The notes beneath the pieces were generated by a model, which was given only the letters and a program-made list of their open reading frames with translations, was not told the origin of the DNA and did not search any database. Positions 3,428 through 30,343 of a DNA stretch of 64,000 nucleotides are shown piece after piece (positions within the stretch are counted from its first letter, which is position 1; each line of letters opens with the position of its first letter). The stretch is taken from contig JAKMXF010000303.1 in the NCBI GenBank assembly GCA_024704765.1, forward strand, positions 1 to 64,000. The letters run 5' to 3'. The stretch comes from Oopsacas minuta (Eukaryota > Animalia > Porifera). Both the position numbers and the translations under genes were made by a program.

Positions 3428-3893
3428 ACATTATTATTAGGTGATTAATGCGGTTATATTGAGTTAGTTACATGTACTTGTTACAATTAACGAGGGTTCA
3501 TGCTATATGCTCATTACAGGTATTTAGGTGAATGGTGTATGTATTTTCTTGGTTTTCTATCATATCTTTTAAACCACTTATCACACGTACATAGGTATAT
3601 TACTCCATTCATGTATTTGTAATTCGCAGTCTGGCATTAATCTCATCCTCTCAATACTATAGAGTCAGTTTTAACCTGTGCAGCTGTGTTATATTTATAA
3701 CACCATTGTTAACTTTCAGAGTATTTCTTAATTTCTTCCAAATTTTCGCAATTGTTTCACTTTCTACTTGAATCCACATGCGGAATTATTTACCTATCTA
3801 TTAATAATAGCTCATATCAAACTAACTTTATTTAATACAAATATCACTGAATTAAGTTTATATACAAACAGTAGACAAACTGCTACTACAGAG

Positions 3894-22236: not shown

Positions 22237-24000
22237 ATGATGAGCAATGTGTCAAGAATTGTTAACACTTCTCTTCATAAAGACAGAGCATTTCATTTAC
22301 TGAAGCTTGAAGTAGTTGTAGTTCAACTGATTAGTGAGCCTAACAGATTGCCTGTACGGACTCTAAAACCTCTCTTCAGAACTTCACCAGTAGTTTCAGT
22401 TTTCACAGGCAATGAACTCGTCAGTAATCTCATGGCAAAACTTCAAACTGAGAAGAGAGAAGCTTTGCACATAGCTGGTCAACTCTATAAGTATGCGTAT
22501 CTGTATCCTGTTGATCAGAGTGTGACGTCAGTAAAAGATGACTCTACTCTCTATAGAATGCAATCAGAAGACAGATGGCCATCTCAATGCATAAGCCCTA
22601 CTAATTTGGATTATTCAACTTATTTAGAAAAGAAGTTGATTCTCAAACAAAAGCTAACAGAGTATGAACAGGATGCTTATGATAGATTCAGCGTTACCTA
22701 TGCTAGGAACTGGCATAACCTCACCATTAAGGCTCAAGAAGAGGCTAACATAGAAGAGAATTATCAAAAAGATGAGCGTGTTGTGAACCAGGGGGAGGAG
22801 CGGACGTTTTGGCACTTGCATCGCCCACCACCTGGAGAACCCCTGGTGATGGAATCTAGCATTCAGAAGCGGAATCTGAACAGGTCTGAGCTCACTGATA
22901 TTGAGATAATACAAGATTTAGAAATTCGTTTGGATGTGTACAGAAGAGCTCAGAAGCGTAACAGAGTTAGAAGTTCTCACTCAGCTGACCTTATAATATC
23001 ACACATGGAAAATTCCTCTAATCAAGATCCTTTTCTAAAAAAGAATGTCTTCAATCCTTGGAGCAATGAGCATAAGCTAGTATCTGGGAATTATATTAAT
23101 AAATTCCAATTATGGAACTCATCTTTTGACGCTTTAATTAGAGATAAATCTGGTCGCGACCTCTTTAGAGCATTTCTGAAAACAGAGGTTTCAACCGAAA
23201 ACCTTTCTTTCTGTGAAGAAGTTACTGAATATAAAATGCTTCCTACCTCACATCTGAAAGATGTAGCACTCCGAATATTCAAGCAGTACATTGGTCCTAC
23301 AGCTCGTAACGAAATTAATATCGATGGAAAAACACTTCGAATAATAAAAGATAGAATGGTAAAACCTGATAGATATACATTTGACCCTGCACAGAATTAC
23401 ATATACGATCTGATGCGTAAGGATTCTTACTGTCGTTTTCTCAAATCTCATGTTTATACAAACGCTTTAAAGAAATATTCTATTGATAGGAAAGCAGGAC
23501 GGATGTCTCGAATTCTAACACACCCGCTTAATGCACATTCTCTACACAATAATAGAGGCTCTATGCTTGAATGTACTTCATCTGATCTCAATCTTGTCAG
23601 GAGCAATTCCATGGATACTTTAACAGAAGTTGATAGTATCGTGTCTCCATGCCACACTAGCATTGCCAGCTCTCATACATCATTTGATGACGAACACACG
23701 CATCGGAAAAAGGCTTCACTATACAGAAACTCCAGTGGGTTAAATTTCGCCTCAGTAGATTATGAAGATATCTTAGATCCAGGGGAAGTAGATCAGAATC
23801 GTCACCCTATGAATAAATCTAAATCTTTGACTCAGCCACGTCTTATCTCTATTCCTGTTAAAAACATGAGTAATTCATTTGATGAGACAGCTTTATCCCA
23901 ACCTGCAGCACCTGTTCTAAAGAATTTTCCAAAACCAAAATCTTCAAAATCTTTTACTCATGATGAAGCACTCCGCACACAACAACTGCTTACTAAATAA
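22237..24000 (+). CDS. R7-family regulator of G-protein signalling (DEP-DHEX-GGL-RGS; RGS6/7/9/11-like), intronless
   Basis: VKDDSTLYRMQ, ERTFWHLHRPPPG, GGL-like DPFL..NPW, and RGS box GRDLFRAFLKTEVSTENLSF...DLMRKDSYCRFLKS. Confidence 0.93.
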   Translation: MMSNVSRIVNTSLHKDRAFHLLKLEVVVVQLISEPNRLPVRTLKPLFRTSPVVSVFTGNELVSNLMAKLQTEKREALHIAGQLYKYAYLYPVDQSVTSVKDDSTLYRMQSEDRWPSQCISPTNLDYSTYLEKKLILKQKLTEYEQDAYDRFSVTYARNWHNLTIKAQEEANIEENYQKDERVVNQGEERTFWHLHRPPPGEPLVMESSIQKRNLNRSELTDIEIIQDLEIRLDVYRRAQKRNRVRSSHSADLIISHMENSSNQDPFLKKNVFNPWSNEHKLVSGNYINKFQLWNSSFDALIRDKSGRDLFRAFLKTEVSTENLSFCEEVTEYKMLPTSHLKDVALRIFKQYIGPTARNEINIDGKTLRIIKDRMVKPDRYTFDPAQNYIYDLMRKDSYCRFLKSHVYTNALKKYSIDRKAGRMSRILTHPLNAHSLHNNRGSMLECTSSDLNLVRSNSMDTLTEVDSIVSPCHTSIASSHTSFDDEHTHRKKASLYRNSSGLNFASVDYEDILDPGEVDQNRHPMNKSKSLTQPRLISIPVKNMSNSFDETALSQPAAPVLKNFPKPKSSKSFTHDEALRTQQLLTK

Positions 24001-24454
24001 TTGCTAATTTTACATATCCGATTGCTTCTTTCAGTGTGCATTTAGCCACTGAATTGAATAATTGGCTATGTTTGTTATACTGTCTAGATCTATATATGTA
24101 TATTTCTTAATTTAGGCCAGCTGATGTATGTTATTTTTTGGTATTTTAAATTATTGTTCAATAAGTTTATTTCGAGATTCTCTGATAGAAAGAATTTATT
24201 CCAATTGGAAGGTGGATATTTCTTGGAAATCCCTTCAAGATTTTCACTTAAATTCCTTTCAGTTAATTCAAGCTGATCTATCCAAATTGCAAATTGGTTG
24301 TAAATGCAAAAGTTTGGTTCACATTTAAATACATACAGTCTGTTAGAGTGGATTTGATAATTTCAAGGTACCGTAAATTGTATGTAGTCACAAAAACATA
24401 TTACCAATCGTATAGTCAGATCCATAGCTATGTCGATACACACAGAGACATAGA

Positions 24455-25315
24455 ATGAATGAGGCACAGAGAGAGGAGCTAAGTGCTCTAGAAGCTGTTT
24501 ATCCTGATGAACTGAGTATCATAAACAAACTGCATAATACATACTCCATGCATTTAGAGGAGTCAGGACACTCCCTTACTCTATATTTTGAGTTCCACTC
24601 TGATTACCCAGCTGTCTTACCTCCCCGCTTCCAATTGGAATCATTCGGACTCGACGAAATAGCAAAAGCAGAACTCCGTAACGAGCTCCTCTCTCAATTT
24701 GAAACAGAGTCAGGAGTGCTGTTTAATTGGGTAGAACATATCATAGAATTCTTATCTCATCTCCCTCCTGTACTAGTACATAGCGAAATATCTCATGATA
24801 CACCTGCATACAGCTTACCTAATAAACCTCAACAACCTGTTAATATTCCTGAGATACATCCTCCACCCATCCTCCAGGAGTCTGATAACTGTTACGAACT
24901 CAAGATATTTCATGGAGAACCTCTAACTGATAGAAAAAGTGTATTCCAATCGCACGCCTGTAGAGTTTCTTCTGTAACTGAGGTTGATCACATGTTAACA
25001 GCTCTGAAATCTAATAAGAAAATCGCACAAGCTACTCATAACATTCTAGCTTATCGCTTCATAGATAAAGAGAGAGGAGTATTGATGCAAGATTGTGATG
25101 ATGATAAAGAGCATGGAGCTGGAGGCAGGTTGTCACACCTGTTACAATTCTCAGGAGCAGAAGGTGTAGCTGTTGTAGTAACTAGATGGTATGGAGGTAT
25201 ACAGCTGGGACCTGATAGATTCAAACACATTAATAACGTGGCAAGAACATTGTTGGTTGAGTGTGGTTTTATCCAAGGAACAGCTGATAAAGGAGGTAAG
25301 AAGAAAAAGAAATAA
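24455..25315 (+). CDS. IMPACT: IMPACT (RWD + UPF0029 domain), GCN1/GCN2 regulator
   Basis: N-terminal RWD (EELSALEAVYP), DRKSVFQSH, ATHNILAYR, DCDDDKEHGAGGRL and VTRWYGGIQLGPDRFKHIN. Confidence 0.95.
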   Translation: MNEAQREELSALEAVYPDELSIINKLHNTYSMHLEESGHSLTLYFEFHSDYPAVLPPRFQLESFGLDEIAKAELRNELLSQFETESGVLFNWVEHIIEFLSHLPPVLVHSEISHDTPAYSLPNKPQQPVNIPEIHPPPILQESDNCYELKIFHGEPLTDRKSVFQSHACRVSSVTEVDHMLTALKSNKKIAQATHNILAYRFIDKERGVLMQDCDDDKEHGAGGRLSHLLQFSGAEGVAVVVTRWYGGIQLGPDRFKHINNVARTLLVECGFIQGTADKGGKKKKK

Positions 25316-26423
25316 TCCTAATGTTGTTTAATTTTAATTATATATCATGTATAGTGTTTTTTATTATCTATATATGTATAATTTAACACCTATTTTAGCT
25401 TAGTGTTAGAATTTATATGTATATATGACACTCATACATACACACTTTTAGATTCGTAACTTACCCCAGTTCGGCAATTTTTTTCCTGACAGGTAATTAT
25501 TCTAGGCTAGACAATCCACATGGATTGAAAATCAAGTTAGGTTATTTTCGGTCCTATTTTGAGGTATTTAAAAGCAGGGGTGTTATACAGGCGCATAAAT
25601 TTGGGTACATATATCTCTAGGGCTAGGCGTATGAAAAGTTCTCTCTAGGGGTAGAAACTCCTACATCATAATGCTAAATGTATAGTCTAGGCGTATGAAA
25701 TGAATTCGAATCAATTTTTAGGGATATGATCCTGAGAACCTGGATGAAACCCTGTTTCAAAGTACTCAGCGCGTACTCTGCGCATGCGCTGAATTTAATG
25801 ACACTATTTTAGTATAGTATAATAAATACACATTTGTAACTAATTATTAGTTAATTCAGCCATTTTCTGGATTATTATATAATTATTAGTTATCAGTTAG
25901 TGTTTACATTTTATGTTCTAATAGCACCAGAGATTTTGATATTTGGAATGATGCAAATAACATCTCAATGCATAGTGGTATAATTCGAGACATCCCTTTT
26001 CAAACAGTAACTTGAAAGAATTCAGAGACATTAGTAGATTAGTTTAGGGTTGAATCCCAACGTTTCATGCCAACATAACTTGCACAGTCATCATATTTTG
26101 GTTGTTGATGAGATATAACAAGATTGGGTCCTAGATCCTTCAAATAGTACACAAGTGTAATCATCAATGGCAGAATATCTATTTTAGATGTATTATGAAA
26201 GTGCATATTTGACGATATCGTCCATGGTCCATAGCAAATTTCCAACATACCATACTCGTTCATGGCCTATAATTTGTTATATTTTTATTTCAAATATTTT
26301 CATACTTATATTCATACTTATATTCATACTTATATTTGTCTTTGGGGTAACTTAAGATCTCTACATATGCGTTATCCTATATCTCACAGTATAGTTATAT
26401 ATTATTGATAAACTAACTGCATA

Positions 26424-27758
26424 ATGGCTACAGCTGACGCTGACTGTGGCTGTGACATGGAGTCTCCCTCACGAATAGAAGAGGCCATAGAGATAGCGTC
26501 TAGTGTTAGAGAGGCAGGGCTGTCTATTGCTGACAGGTGTTCTGGTCTGTTCAGCTCGCTGGGATTTGGGAAGCAAATGAATTGTTTCGTAGCTTCTGAA
26601 CTTATAGACTTGTTGATAAGTAAGGGCTTTGCTGAAAACCGTGATGGAGCAGTGTCAGTAGGTCAGTTATTGGTCGATACTGATCTGATACACCACGTGT
26701 CTGATAAACTACAGTTCATGGACGGAGACCACTTTTATAGGTTTAGAAAGGATGAAGGGGAGGATAAGGGACCCAGTGCAGCATCTATCCGTCAAGTTAA
26801 GAAATCTCATTGTGGTTACGTTTATAAGAAGGGATATATATTCTGGTCAAGGTAAGTAACTGTTATTTCATTTTACTCAGGTATAATTGTGGTAATTGTA
26901 TAGATATTATTTCGCATTATCCTGTCCTGCTTCGAGACAGCTGCTGGTGTATAGACAGGAATTAGACTCTAATCCTCTGCTAAACTACTCATTCTCTGAG
27001 GCTGTCCTAACGCCAAATTTAAAGAAGAAATCGCCAGAAATTAGAATAGATCTCACACTACTAACTAAAGATTCAGTTACACTGTTCCTAGCATTGAGGA
27101 GTGAAGATGAACTATTTGGTTGGGTTACAGCTTTTGGTAACTCTGGAGCTAAGGTTTGTTATACTATTTGTTTATTTCTGTGTGCGTATTATTATATTTA
27201 TTGCCTACCTATTACATCATACTATATACTTAGGTATTGGACACTGTTAACAGAGCTATTGTGCCAAACAAAGCTTCTAGTGTGTTTGAGTTCACTGCGA
27301 TAGATATTCACGGAAATGAATATTCATTTGAACAAGATAGAGGTAAAGTAATGCTGTTTGTGAATGTAGCGAGTGAATGAGGACTAACTCAGAAGAACTA
27401 CCGTCAGTTGGTAGATCTTCATACTCAGTACTCAGAACAAGGACTTATGATTGTAGCCTTCCCTTGTAATCAGTTTGGAGGACAAGAACCTAAGACTAAT
27501 GAAGAGATTTTTCAGTTTTCACAAACATTCGGAGTAAAATTCCTGATGATGTCAAAAGTGGATGTCAATCTTAGCAAGACGATACCTCTGTACGAATATT
27601 TGAAATCTAAGAAAGGTGGTACCCTTGGTTCCTTCATCAAGTGGAACTTTACTAAGTTTCTATGTGATAGACAGGGACAGCCTGTCATACGTTACGCCCC
27701 TAATGTAGACCCTATTTCAATAGCACCTGACATTGAGAAGTACCTTTTAATGCAATAA
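26424..27758 (+). CDS. DEP-PH-glutathione peroxidase (GPx4-type) fusion selenoprotein, join(26424..26851,26904..27153,27234..27758), Sec at UGA 27378-27380, 400 aa
   Basis: DEP (FVASELIDLL...AVSVGQLL...IHHV..F.DGDHFYRF) and PH (GYVYKKG..WSRYYFAL...ELFGWVTAF). Two GT-AG introns keep the frame into VNVASE-U-GLT..FPCNQFGGQEP..KWNFTKFL. SECIS downstream. Confidence 0.85.
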
Positions 27759-27785
27759 ATATGAATTATAACCAGGATACGAGGA

Positions 27786-27850
27786 AGGAGATTGGTATGA
27801 AGATTTCATTCTTAACCTAATTGGGGAATGTTATCCGATCTTAACTCTCT
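27786..27850 (+). promoter_or_regulatory. SECIS element (type II-like) of the DEP-PH-GPx gene
   Basis: ATGA (27797-27800), helix GATTTCATTC/GAATGTTATC, unpaired AA, CC/GG mini-stem and GA at 27837-27838, starting about 30 nt after the stop codon. Confidence 0.85.
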
Positions 27851-28029
27851 ATTTCTCATTTTATAATTTTATTTTTTATTATTTATCCTCAAAGCTTTTA
27901 ATTTTCTTTGATTTTTTATTCGTAAGTAGTTGTTGAAATTAGGATTTTGTCATGTTAATAATGTCATCAGTGGGATTGAGTGGGTCATGAGTTCTTAAGA
28001 GGTCTAGATGTCTGATTTTATATACACGA

Positions 28030-28350
28030 GCCGCTTCGCTTGCTCGTGCTGCGCAGCTTGAGAACACTGTTCGCATTTAACTCGGCACTTCCTACCTCGA
28101 ATTTTTCATAAGAACAACGATTACCCATGTATATCCGTTAAGAGTTTAACTCTACATATATTTTGAGACTTCAACTATTTGTTTACTTTCTATACATAAT
28201 ATCAACAAATCTATATTTACATATGATAAATTCAAAAGTGTGAAATCGGATTTAGCATATTCAATATATTTAGTCAATTTTATAAAATTCTGTTTACTCC
28301 CTTGATAAACATTATAAATATATACGTAGTTATGCGACATCTCAGGATCC
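28030..28350 (-). mobile_element. Truncated Helitron-like family copy between the two GPx modules
   Basis: CCGCTTCGCTTGCTCG and CAAAAGTGTGAAATCGGATTTAGCATATTC blocks shared with 4690-5215 and 31930-33017. Confidence 0.6.
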
Positions 28351-29190: not shown

Positions 29191-29790
29191 ATGATAAGTA
29201 TCCCTATTTTACGAAAGGCTCCACTTGTTACAATATCAGTTGTAACCGTGCTACTGCTAAGTGTTGCGTTGTGGACATTACAAAGCTATCCAAATGAAAG
29301 TGAAGCTTCTAGTGTGTTTGAGTTCACTGCGATAGATATTCACGGAAATGAATATTCATTTGAACAAGATAGAGGTAAAGTAATGCTGTTTGTGAATGTA
29401 GCGAGTGAATGAGGACTAACTGAAGAGAACTACCGTCAGTTGGTAGATCTTCATACTCAGTACTCAGAACAAGGACTTAGGATTGTAGCCTTCCCTTGTA
29501 ATCAGTTTGGAGGACAAGAGCCTAAGACTAATGAAGAGATTTTTCAGTTTTCACAAACATTCGGAGTAAAATTCCTGATGATGTCAAAAGTGGATGTCAA
29601 TCTTAGCAAGACGATACCTCTGTACGAATATTTGAAATCTAAGAAAGGTGGTACCCTTGGTTCTTTCGTCAAGTGGAACTTTACTAAGTTTCTATGTGAT
29701 AGACAGGGACAGCCTGTCATACGTTACGCCCCTAATGTAGACCCTATTTCAATAGCACCTGACATTGAGAAGTATCTTTTAATGCAATAA
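29191..29790 (+). CDS. GPx4-type selenoprotein with N-terminal signal peptide/anchor, Sec at UGA 29410-29412, 199 aa, intronless
   Basis: ORFs 29191-29412 and 29440-29790 are in the same frame, separated only by TGA at the peroxidatic position. Catalytic Gln, Trp and Asn are intact, the N-terminus is hydrophobic, and a SECIS follows. Confidence 0.92.
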
Positions 29791-29817
29791 ATATGAATTA
29801 TAACCAGGATACGAGGA

Positions 29818-29882
29818 AGGAGATTGGTATGAAGATTTCATTCTTAACCTAACTGGGGAATGTTATCCGATCTTAACTCTCT
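29818..29882 (+). promoter_or_regulatory. SECIS element of the second GPx gene
   Basis: Core is the same as the first SECIS (ATGA 29829-29832, GA 29869-29870) apart from one apical-loop base. Confidence 0.85.
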
Positions 29883-30343
29883 ATTTCCTCTTTTCTTAAC
29901 TTTATTATTTGATTTAAGGTGTTGAGATACTATTTTCATGATAAATTATTTTAGTAAGTAAGCATCTAACCATATACCCTTCACCTGGAAATTTCGTGTT
30001 AGGAGAAATGATGTTACAAACGGCCCCTGCTCTGCATTGCTATTCCACTTCAGTAGACGCTTAGTAGTAAACGAATCGAGAATCCTCTGAATCGAATTTC
30101 GAATCGTTTTAATCTGACTTTTAGCATATGATACGATTAATATATATAACTCTACAATTTGAAATAGGGTTCCTTCTCTTGGAAGAGCATTAGGAAATTT
30201 CTTTTGAATTAGATAGAGTTTTCTTGTGGTTTTTAATTTTTCCTGAAAAATTAACTTTCGACAGTATCGCTTGATTGGAGCAACACTGATCCTGTTATAT
30301 CAAAAAGTTACTCGGCTTTATTTGGTGGATTTATCTTGCTAGC

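What the first reader, a model, noticed from the sequence alone, without database searches (positions are those of the whole stretch)
26424..27850. Hidden DEP-PH-GPx4 fusion selenoprotein: a membrane/signal-recruited lipid hydroperoxide reductase
Seen in sequence: three ORF-track fragments join through canonical introns (26852-26903 phase 2; 27154-27233 phase 0) into one 400-aa frame. It reads DEP domain, PH domain, a short linker (VLDTVNRAIVPNK), then a complete GPx fold with UGA 27378-27380 at the peroxidatic site and a SECIS in the 3' UTR. The GPx exon has no in-frame ATG before the domain start, so it needs the DEP-PH exons. Established: GPx4-type enzymes use Sec with a Gln/Trp/Asn tetrad to reduce phospholipid hydroperoxides and block ferroptosis; PH domains often bind phosphoinositides; DEP domains target membranes and GPCRs. 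Inference: this peroxidase could be recruited to specific membranes or receptors on signal. I know of no described GPx with this architecture, and standard annotation would split or truncate it at the UGA.
Basis: partly seen in the sequence, partly recalled or inferred. Interest (0 to 1): 0.92.

Follow-up and report, generated by a model that had tools for sequence, protein, structure and literature searches.

The report
DEP-PH-GPx4-like fusion selenoprotein gene
A three-exon gene here encodes a selenium-containing, GPx4-like peroxidase fused to two membrane/signalling domains (DEP and PH); it is real and belongs to a widespread eukaryotic family that databases nearly always cut short at the selenocysteine codon and that I found described in no paper.

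Summary
Exons 26424-26851, 26904-27153 and 27234-27758 join through GT..AG introns into a 400-codon frame: DEP, PH, short linker, then a complete GPx4-type domain. TGA 27378-27380 sits at the peroxidatic site and a SECIS-like hairpin lies at 27788-47.

In this species an RNA-like run shows the intron-1 joint. Its depth falls to zero exactly between the intron-2 splice sites, but no intron-2 joint was listed.

The decisive support is comparative. A distant relative has the same synteny and the same two intron positions. An intron-less contig from it reads DEP-PH-GPx through a TGA at the same site. All parts are under purifying selection.

The architecture is not unique. More than 50 protein clusters share it, from corals, amoebae and environmental samples, plus a Cys form and an oomycete-type match. 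All 54 aligned members end just before the Sec codon. Six literature searches found no description.

Membrane or signal recruitment remains an inference. The PH domain of this lineage is divergent and lacks a clear phosphoinositide motif.

Verdict: the gene model is correct and it is a new member of an uncharacterised, mis-annotated variant of GPx4-type selenoperoxidases.

The parts
26424..26851 (+). Exon 1 coding part: N-terminal CxC motif, DEP domain and the first PH strand (codons 1-142 plus 2 nt)
   Evidence: Pfam DEP 57 bits, E 1.9e-15. RNA-like run X4 covers it. It is 66% identical to the relative's product.
26852..26903 (+). Intron 1, 52 nt, GT..AG, phase 2
   Evidence: A spliced joint 26849>26902 (cut +2) was seen in 3 contigs of run X4. 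The relative has an intron in the same codon.
26904..27153 (+). Exon 2: the rest of a divergent PH domain
   Evidence: Pfam PH is only E 0.21. The exon aligns colinearly with family members whose PH is significant. The AF2 model of the orthologue P0224 shows seven strands plus a C-terminal helix, and Foldseek matches PH domains.
27154..27233 (+). Intron 2, 80 nt, GT..AG, phase 0; it joins the PH exon to the GPx exon
   Evidence: X4 depth is about 2e4 up to roughly 27153, zero across 27160-27231, and resumes at 27232. No joint was listed. The relative's intron-less contig joins the homologous exons at the same codon..GAK|VL...
27234..27758 (+). Exon 3 coding part: 13-15 aa linker, then the GPx4-type domain through the TAA stop
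   Evidence: Pfam GSHPx on both sides of the TGA. The best solved relatives are Schistosoma GPx and human/mouse GPX4, E 1e-35 to 1e-38. X4 contigs run from the unique leader 27232-27270 into the GPx part.
27378..27380 (+). In-frame TGA read as selenocysteine (codon 275) in VNVASE-U-GLT
   Evidence: The position corresponds to Cys in the natural Cys form P0199 (VNVSSFCGLT) and to the first stop, always TGA, in transcripts or contigs of six other lineages.
27788..27847 (+). SECIS element in the 3' UTR (ATGA 27797-27800, apical AA, 3' GA)
   Evidence: Rfam SECIS_1 full-length match, 18.1 bits, E 0.33, below the gathering score. It is identical except for one loop base in the paralogue. The relative keeps it with a GUGA core and 3 compensatory pairs.
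29191..29887 (+). Separate paralogous gene: single exon with a hydrophobic N-terminus, plus a 98% identical copy of the GPx+SECIS cassette (29303-29887 = 27271-27855)
   Evidence: the repeat finder and the alignment, Pfam and tblastn. It is not part of the fusion gene but was derived from it, or homogenised with it.

Best explanation
Window 26424-27847 is one three-exon gene for a 400-residue selenoprotein. It has a DEP domain, a divergent PH domain, a short linker, and a monomeric GPx4-type glutathione peroxidase. The peroxidase uses selenocysteine (UGA 27378-27380, decoded through the 3'-UTR SECIS at 27788-27847) with the Gln/Trp/Asn tetrad intact and no resolving cysteine. This much is shown: the gene model, the domain folds, conservation of the whole architecture, and purifying selection on every part. 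The mechanism is inferred. The DEP-PH module, perhaps helped by an N-terminal CxC acylation motif, holds the peroxidase at anionic membrane surfaces or at a membrane-bound partner. There the Sec site reduces lipid (phospholipid) hydroperoxides, or locally produced H2O2, at the expense of glutathione or protein thiols. In other words it is GPx4 chemistry positioned by a built-in targeting module, instead of by the alternative leader peptides used by vertebrate GPX4. My confidence in the gene model is about 0.93. My confidence in the membrane-targeted lipid-hydroperoxidase mechanism is about 0.5.
For: Gene model: the frames and splice sites check out, and Pfam finds DEP and GSHPx. The intron-1 joint is present in RNA-like run X4. 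X4 depth is zero only between the intron-2 GT and AG, and the unique exon-3 leader is covered and contiguous with GPx. Exon 3 has an in-frame TAG just upstream and no usable ATG. Orthologue: the relative's genome L001 has the same RGS7-like / IMPACT / DEP / GSHPx order. Its intron-less contig L002 aligns to L001 in three blocks, with introns at the same codons, and reads DEP-PH-GPx with TGA at codon 276. The two products are colinear over 400 aa with 54-69% identity by part. pN is 0.18-0.28 against pS 0.72-0.87 in every part, including after the Sec codon. Family: the exhaustive and profile searches found more than 50 clusters with DEP+PH+GSHPx. All aligned members end before the Sec codon, and loci L003-L011 continue in frame after the TGA. 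The Cys form P0199 is full length. Folds: the P0224 model has pLDDT 86.9 and pTM 0.79 with DEP and PH. The P0199 model has pLDDT 86.3 and pTM 0.73. GPx4 type: the best solved matches are GPX4/PHGPx, aligned over 121 residues without the oligomerisation insert. The SECIS is supported.
Against: No contig that bridges 27153>27234 was listed for this species; there is only a sharp coverage gap and a 49-nt contig with 6 unaligned letters before 27232. The SECIS scores below Rfam's gathering threshold. PH is below Pfam's threshold in the window and in the relative, and the family's conserved beta2 Arg is Tyr here, so lipid-headgroup binding is uncertain. Nothing here tests localisation, substrate or Sec insertion. 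DEP domains also bind proteins such as GPCR tails and mTOR, so the module could serve regulation rather than membrane tethering.
Confidence: 0.6

Rival explanations
1. The fusion protein is real but acts mainly as a redox sensor or relay rather than a bulk lipid-hydroperoxide reductase. The Sec site would be oxidised by H2O2 or lipid hydroperoxide and pass the oxidation to a thiol of a partner bound by the DEP-PH module, such as a G-protein-pathway or mTOR-type protein. This is how yeast Orp1/Gpx3 oxidises Yap1, or how GPX4 acts as a protein-thiol peroxidase in sperm.
For: The DEP domain is closest in structure to the DEPTOR, P-Rex1 and Epac DEP domains, which are signalling modules. There is no resolving Cys, so the selenenic acid must react with an external thiol (sequence). 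The high pTM of the three-domain model suggests a fixed inter-domain arrangement. The genome already has a second, membrane-anchored copy of the same GPx for bulk duty.
Against: No partner is known. The GPx domain is nearest to GPX4 enzymes that do reduce lipid hydroperoxides. The two roles are not mutually exclusive.
Confidence: 0.25
2. There are two separate genes. A DEP-PH gene ends near 27153, and an independent GPx mRNA starts at the 27233 acceptor by spliced-leader trans-splicing, as the downstream gene of an operon. On this reading the 400-aa frame is an accident of adjacency.
For: The relative's transcript carries a 24-nt non-genomic leader joined at an AG acceptor. Other first-stage notes (unchecked) suspect trans-splicing and operons in this genome. 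No intron-2 joint was listed in this species.
Against: DEP-PH would have no stop codon before 27301, yet RNA coverage stops at the GT donor 27153/54. Exon 3 has no ATG before the GPx core and has an in-frame TAG upstream. The relative's contigs (5 of them) join the three exons. Dozens of lineages, some with an uninterrupted ORF such as L007, encode the same fusion. Intron positions and phases are conserved although synonymous sites are saturated.
Confidence: 0.04
3. The UGA is a genuine stop. The product would be a 274-aa DEP-PH protein with a 48-residue GPx stub, and the downstream GPx sequence would be a decaying remnant.
For: Gene callers produce exactly this product in every lineage.
Against: The region after the UGA is the best conserved part, at 69% identity with pN 0.18 against pS 0.87. 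It keeps the catalytic Gln, Trp and Asn. A SECIS with compensatory changes follows it. A natural Cys form exists. The genome carries many other selenoprotein candidates according to earlier notes (unchecked).
Confidence: 0.03

Closest known systems
GPX4 / phospholipid hydroperoxide glutathione peroxidase (human GPX4, e.g. PDB 2obi; Schistosoma mansoni GPx, PDB 2v1m)
   Same: It has the same thioredoxin-like GPx fold, with Sec in the VNVASxUG motif and the Gln (GGQEP), Trp and Asn (KWNF) of the catalytic tetrad. It has no oligomerisation loop and no resolving Cys. It is the best sequence match among solved structures, E 1e-35 to 1e-38 over 121 residues.
   Different: It carries about 240 extra N-terminal residues forming DEP and PH domains. 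Vertebrate GPX4 is directed by alternative short leader peptides (mitochondrial, nuclear) and binds membranes through a cationic surface patch, not through dedicated domains (background knowledge).
Uncharacterised database entries with DEP+PH+GSHPx: corals (Stylophora pistillata 'Glutathione peroxidase' P0185, Montipora foliosa P0176, Desmophyllum pertusum P0187), amoebozoan transcripts (Difflugia, Arcella, Stenamoeba; EukProt), AFDB A0A024G5R6 and an oomycete GPx cluster in the ESM Atlas
   Same: They share the same domain order and align colinearly with the window's three exon products. Most are Sec forms whose ORF stops at the UGA.
   Different: The window's lineage has a divergent PH domain (below Pfam threshold), an N-terminal CxC motif and two introns. 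Identity to the other members is only about 30-46%. Some relatives use Cys (P0199). None has a published function that I could find.
DEP-plus-PH signalling proteins: pleckstrin (PH-DEP-PH), P-Rex1, DEPTOR, Epac
   Same: The DEP fold is closest to the DEPTOR tandem DEP (36% identity) and to P-Rex1 and Epac2. The PH fold is closest to SKAP-Hom, DAPP1, Akt and the pleckstrin C-terminal PH.
   Different: None of these carries a redox enzyme, and here there is no GEF, RGS or PDZ domain. The canonical K-Xn-(K/R)-X-R phosphoinositide motif is incomplete.
Yeast Orp1/Gpx3 and other GPx-type peroxide sensors
   Same: A GPx4-like monomer that could hand its oxidation on to a bound partner. This is a resemblance in how it might work only.
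   Different: Orp1 uses Cys with a resolving Cys and has no DEP or PH domain. No partner is known here.
The window's own paralogue at 29191-29887 (N-terminal hydrophobic anchor + GPx + SECIS)
   Same: It has a 98% identical GPx core and SECIS.
   Different: It is targeted by a single hydrophobic N-terminal segment instead of DEP-PH, is a single exon, and is absent from the 2.8 kb downstream of the relative's gene.

Membership tests
Glutathione peroxidase, GPx4 type (Pfam PF00255) | GSHPx domain recognised over its full length | tested here: met
   Profile positions 1-31 lie before the TGA (E 1.1e-5) and positions 34-108 after it (88 bits, E 3.4e-25).
Glutathione peroxidase, GPx4 type (Pfam PF00255) | Peroxidatic Sec/Cys in the NVAS-x-(U/C)-G motif, plus catalytic Gln, Trp and Asn | tested here: met
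   VNVASE-TGA-GLT, GGQEP and KWNFTKF are all present in the translation and align with GPX4.
Glutathione peroxidase, GPx4 type (Pfam PF00255) | Monomeric type: no oligomerisation insert, closest to GPX4 rather than GPX1/3 | tested here: met
   121 residues align to 123 of GPX4-type chains at E 1e-35 or better. GPX1, 2, 3 and 6 match only residues 1-76 at E 1e-10 to 1e-17.
Glutathione peroxidase, GPx4 type (Pfam PF00255) | Reduces phospholipid hydroperoxides with GSH | not testable with these tools
   This needs an enzyme assay.
Eukaryotic selenoprotein | In-frame UGA aligned with Sec or Cys of homologues, with conserved coding sequence after it | tested here: met
   Cys stands at this position in P0199, and TGA at the same site in L002-L011. 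After the TGA, pN is 0.18 against pS 0.87.
Eukaryotic selenoprotein | SECIS element in the 3' UTR | tested here: inconclusive
   There is a full-length match to Rfam SECIS_1 with all core motifs, but at 18.1 bits against a gathering score of 35, E 0.33. It was not found in the 5-kb scan. It is conserved in the paralogue, and in the relative with 3 compensatory pairs. No SECISearch3 was available.
Eukaryotic selenoprotein | Selenocysteine actually inserted | not testable with these tools
   This needs 75Se labelling or mass spectrometry.
DEP domain (PF00610) | Sequence match above the curated cut-off, and the DEP fold | tested here: met
   57 bits against a cut-off of 32.7. The orthologue model matches the DEPTOR DEP at 36% identity.
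PH domain (PF00169) | Sequence match above the curated cut-off | tested here: not met
   12.6 bits against 25.1 for exon 2. There was no PH hit in the spliced orthologue P0224 at E < 0.01. Other family members pass, at 31-35 bits.
PH domain (PF00169) | Seven-stranded sandwich capped by a C-terminal helix | tested here: met
   In the AF2 model of orthologue P0224, residues 129-222 form 7 strands plus a helix with pLDDT mostly above 85. Foldseek gives TM 0.72-0.80 by target to the SKAP-Hom, DAPP1, PEPP1 and pleckstrin PH domains. This was tested on the orthologue, not on the window's own spliced sequence.
PH domain (PF00169) | Phosphoinositide-binding basic motif in beta1-beta2 | tested here: inconclusive
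   KKG at the end of beta1 is kept. The family's FW-x-K-R-Y is FWSRYY here, so the Arg is shifted or lost.
DEP-PH-GPx fusion family (unnamed) | The three domains colinear in one reading frame or one mRNA | tested here: met
   The window pieces align colinearly with five family representatives. The orthologue's intron-less contig shows it, as does the single ORF in L007.
DEP-PH-GPx fusion family (unnamed) | Splice junction PH exon to GPx exon seen in this species' RNA | tested here: inconclusive
   The coverage gap matches the splice sites exactly but no joint was listed. The intron-1 joint was seen.

The most novel reading that the evidence does not exclude
DEP-PH-GPx may be an ancient, pan-eukaryotic class of GPx4-like selenoperoxidase, found so far in animals, Amoebozoa and oomycete-type lineages. 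Its position at membranes, or on a signalling partner, would be set by built-in DEP/PH domains and possibly by N-terminal acylation. That would give regulated, site-specific control of lipid peroxidation or peroxide signalling that predates, and differs from, the vertebrate GPX4 isoform system. The class has stayed invisible because gene callers stop at the Sec codon.
Probability: 0.4. Interest if true: 0.78.

Novelty: new variant of a known kind. Interest (0 to 1): 0.62.

Why it matters
GPX4 is the central guard against lipid peroxidation and ferroptosis. How the enzyme is brought to particular membranes is known only for vertebrate isoforms. A conserved family in which the same chemistry is hard-wired to DEP and PH domains offers a natural experiment in targeted peroxide control. 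It is also a candidate link between G-protein/phosphoinositide-type signalling modules and redox chemistry. Practically, the family is a clear case of systematic mis-annotation: all 54 aligned relatives are truncated at the UGA, and the coral gene models skip the active site. Correcting this would change selenoproteome counts in corals, amoebae and this animal lineage.

Tried and rejected
The Rfam scan of 5 kb found no SECIS. Only a 161-nt scan at a relaxed threshold gave the sub-threshold SECIS_1 match, and the same scan on the relative's UTR missed its GUGA-type element, which I then found by eye and by alignment.

MFE folding of the SECIS region is not better than shuffles (z -0.9). This is uninformative because SECIS cores use non-Watson-Crick pairs.

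Runs X2 and X3 carry the introns at flat depth and look like DNA, so they say nothing about splicing.

The protein search with the orthologue P0224 returned nothing at E 1e-15, and the search with the N-terminal region of P0199 returned only one more relative. The word pre-filter misses this divergent family.

Exact look-up of the window's exon-1 ORF and of the paralogue's N-terminal ORF found neither in the collection.

Six literature searches found only DEPTOR/ferroptosis reviews. The algal selenoproteome paper PMC7539508 reports other selenoprotein fusions but not this one.

I considered a chance in-frame join of neighbouring genes, trans-splicing of the GPx exon, and a genuine stop at the UGA, and rejected all three; see the rival explanations.

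I did not build a GPx tree, so single versus multiple origin of the fusion rests only on the homology of the DEP-PH module.

Organism names for AFDB accessions were masked by the tool, so I do not rely on them.
Full report
**1. What is in the sequence**

The region is eukaryotic, with 36% G+C in the window and 41% in the coding part. Three ORF fragments on the + strand join through canonical introns.
- Exon 1 is 26424-26851, with donor AAG|GTAAGT.
- Intron 1 is 26852-26903 (52 nt, phase 2).
- Exon 2 is 26904-27153, with donor AAG|GTTTGT.
- Intron 2 is 27154-27233 (80 nt, phase 0, acceptor CTTAG|G).
- Exon 3 coding sequence is 27234-27758.

The spliced CDS is 1203 nt. It has a single internal TGA at codon 275 (27378-27380) and TAA at 27756-27758.

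Pfam finds DEP in exon 1 at 57 bits, E 1.9e-15. It finds GSHPx on both sides of the TGA, covering profile positions 1-31 and 34-108, so the TGA falls on the peroxidatic residue. In exon 2 alone it finds only a weak PH signal, E 0.21.

The codon just before 27234 is an in-frame TAG. The first ATG in exon 3 lies inside the GPx core. The GPx exon therefore cannot make a complete enzyme on its own.

**2. The peroxidase**

The part after the TGA matches GPX4-type chains best: Schistosoma GPx 2v1m/2wgr and human and mouse GPX4, at E 1e-35 to 1e-38. It aligns over 121 residues without the oligomerisation insert. GPX1, 2, 3 and 6 match only partly.

The motifs VNVASE-U-GLT, GGQEP and KWNFTKF supply the Sec/Gln/Trp/Asn tetrad. 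There is no Cys at the position of the resolving Cys of thioredoxin-dependent GPx enzymes (sequence; the motif positions come from background knowledge of GPX4).

**3. The SECIS**

A 5-kb Rfam scan found nothing. A focused scan gave a full-length SECIS_1 match at 27788-27847 with 18.1 bits and E 0.33, below the gathering score of 35. ATGA, the apical AA and the 3' GA are correctly placed.

The element is identical except for one loop base in the paralogue 2 kb downstream. In a distant relative it is retained with a GUGA core and with compensatory changes in both helices, at 3 pairs. I regard it as a genuine SECIS, but formally below the curated threshold.

**4. RNA evidence in this species**

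Four runs from one sample hold the region. Runs X2 and X3 carry the introns at flat single-copy depth and look like DNA.

Run X4 behaves like cDNA.
- It has a GT..AG joint that removes intron 1, in 3 contigs.
- In 9-nt bins its depth is about 2e4 up to the donor at 27153.
- Depth is zero from 27160 to 27231.
- Depth resumes at 27232 with a 49-nt contig that has 6 unaligned letters upstream.
- Another contig runs from the unique leader (27245) into the GPx core.

A run from a second organism (X5) carries the same PH-exon / intron / GPx-exon arrangement as DNA. Most of its differences are in the intron: 8 of the 12 listed substitutions plus a 1-nt insertion.

**5. Comparative evidence, which settles the gene model**

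An exhaustive phmmer search with exon 1 gave a 120-aa ORF at 68% identity (P0001). It also gave five proteins of 252-281 aa that read DEP, PH, then the GPx N-terminus, and stop at ...VNVAS-x. The window's three exon products align colinearly with them.

P0001 lies on a 384-kb contig with the same gene order as the window: an R7-type RGS, IMPACT, DEP, then GSHPx. Its 90% cluster contains P0224 (275 aa), which is encoded on five short contigs. One of these, L002 (1588 nt), aligns to the relative's genome in three blocks. The introns are 62 and 57 nt and sit in exactly the same codons as the window's introns. L002 reads DEP-PH-linker-GPx with TGA at codon 276 and TAA at 399.

The window's and the relative's products are colinear over their whole length, at 66% (DEP), 54% (PH), 53% (linker) and 69% (GPx) identity. 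Synonymous sites are saturated, with pS 0.72-0.87, while pN is 0.18-0.28 in every part, including after the Sec codon. The fusion is therefore old and selected as a whole.

**6. The family**

A profile search returned 75 proteins, about 55 of which carry Pfam DEP+PH+GSHPx. Their sources are:
- environmental transcript and contig sets (JGI, Logan);
- EukProt transcriptomes of the amoebozoans Difflugia compressa, Arcella intermedia and Stenamoeba stenopodia;
- NCBI corals (Montipora foliosa, Stylophora pistillata, Desmophyllum pertusum) and Paramuricea clavata.

All 54 aligned members end at VNVA(S/T)x. In loci L003-L011 the first stop is always TGA and the GPx continues in frame. L007 is one uninterrupted ORF inside a 4.4-kb contig.

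The annotations are poor.
- Montipora's entry is a truncated '1-phosphatidylinositol 3-phosphate 5-kinase-like' protein.
- The Stylophora and Desmophyllum models jump over the active site.
- One Logan ORF reads the TGA as Trp.
- P0199 is a natural full-length Cys form of 408 aa.

The AF2 model of P0199 has pLDDT 86.3 and pTM 0.73. It matches an AFDB entry of 393 aa named 'Glutathione peroxidase' from end to end. The nearest ESM Atlas cluster is an oomycete GPx family of 95 members. The architecture is thus widespread and visible in databases. Six full-text searches found no paper that describes it.

**7. The N-terminal module**

The AF2 model of the orthologue P0224 has pLDDT 86.9 and pTM 0.79. 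It shows a DEP fold followed by seven strands and a C-terminal helix. Foldseek places the DEP next to the DEPTOR, P-Rex1 and Epac2 DEP domains. It places the second domain next to the SKAP-Hom, DAPP1, Akt and pleckstrin PH domains.

In the window's lineage the PH domain is too divergent for Pfam. The family's beta2 motif FW-x-K-R-Y reads FWSRYY here. A specific phosphoinositide ligand therefore cannot be predicted.

An N-terminal CxC motif (MATADADCGC) is shared with the relative and with a subgroup of the family (MAHCGC, MAQLCNC; many others begin MC or MAC). It is a candidate S-acylation site, which would fit a membrane location. This last point is inference.

**8. How it most likely works**

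These points are shown: one gene; DEP, PH and GPx4-type domains; a Sec codon with a SECIS; and selection on all parts.

The mechanism is inferred. The DEP-PH module, with or without acylation, places a monomeric selenoperoxidase on anionic membranes or on a membrane-bound partner. There it reduces lipid hydroperoxides or local H2O2 using GSH or protein thiols.

The main rival (0.25) is a sensor or relay role in which the oxidised Sec is resolved by a thiol of a DEP/PH-bound partner. The two-gene trans-splicing reading (0.04) is contradicted by four observations: the lack of a stop for DEP-PH, the lack of a start for GPx, the coverage profile, and the relative's contigs. The 'UGA is a stop' reading (0.03) is contradicted by the conservation after the UGA and by the SECIS.

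**9. Novelty and score**

This is a correct and useful catch. It is one member of a sizeable family, not a one-off invention of this genome. It is a new variant of GPx4-type selenoperoxidases: database-visible, systematically truncated, and apparently undescribed. I score interest at 0.62. A selenoprotein or ferroptosis specialist would find the architecture and its breadth surprising, but the function is untested.

An earlier first-stage note on this same window (s1-266787) already recorded the duplicated GPx+SECIS cassette, which I confirmed.

Noticed in passing
window 29191-29887 (cassette 29303-29887 = 27271-27855): There is a second Sec-GPx gene 1.4 kb downstream. It is a single exon with a hydrophobic, signal-anchor-like N-terminus, joined to a 98% identical copy of the GPx core, stop codon and SECIS. 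Identity starts 37 nt inside exon 3 of the fusion gene and ends just after the SECIS. The relative's syntenic locus has only one GPx within 2.8 kb downstream, so this is a lineage-specific partial duplication or gene conversion. A contig with its unique upstream sequence is present in the RNA-like run X4.
   Followed up: partly
L002 1-24 versus L001 about 3866-3890: The relative's transcript begins with 24 nt (AACTTCAAACAAAACTAAATACAG) that do not match the genome upstream. They join at an AG acceptor 41 nt before the ATG. This looks like a spliced leader or an upstream non-coding exon, and it fits unchecked notes that this genome uses trans-splicing.
   Followed up: partly
window 22237-25312: The upstream neighbours are intron-less ORFs for an R7-type RGS protein (DEP-DHEX-GGL-RGS, 587 aa) and an IMPACT homologue (RWD + UPF0029). 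The order RGS / IMPACT / DEP-PH-GPx is conserved in the relative's contig L001 even though synonymous sites are saturated.
   Followed up: partly
window 26424-26455 (codons 1-10): An N-terminal CxC motif (MATADADCGC) is conserved in the relative (MATADSECGC). It is echoed in a family subgroup (MAHCGC, MAQLCNC) and in many members that start MC or MAC. It is a candidate S-acylation site.
   Followed up: no
window 28051-28116, minus strand: A weak C/D-box snoRNA-like match (SNORD49, 20 bits against a gathering score of 37, E 0.19) lies in the spacer between the two GPx genes, with a well-matched UAGGAAGUGCCG stretch.
   Followed up: no
L002 1303-1345: The relative's SECIS has GUGA instead of AUGA in the core quartet, and Rfam SECIS_1 missed it.
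   Followed up: partly
L005 3' UTR (about 1300-1480): One family member from an environmental transcript set has two SECIS-like hairpins in its 3' UTR.
   Followed up: no
window 26300-26345: A short tandem repeat (units of CATACTTATATT) lies about 80 nt upstream of the start codon, just before the point where run coverage begins (26364).
   Followed up: no
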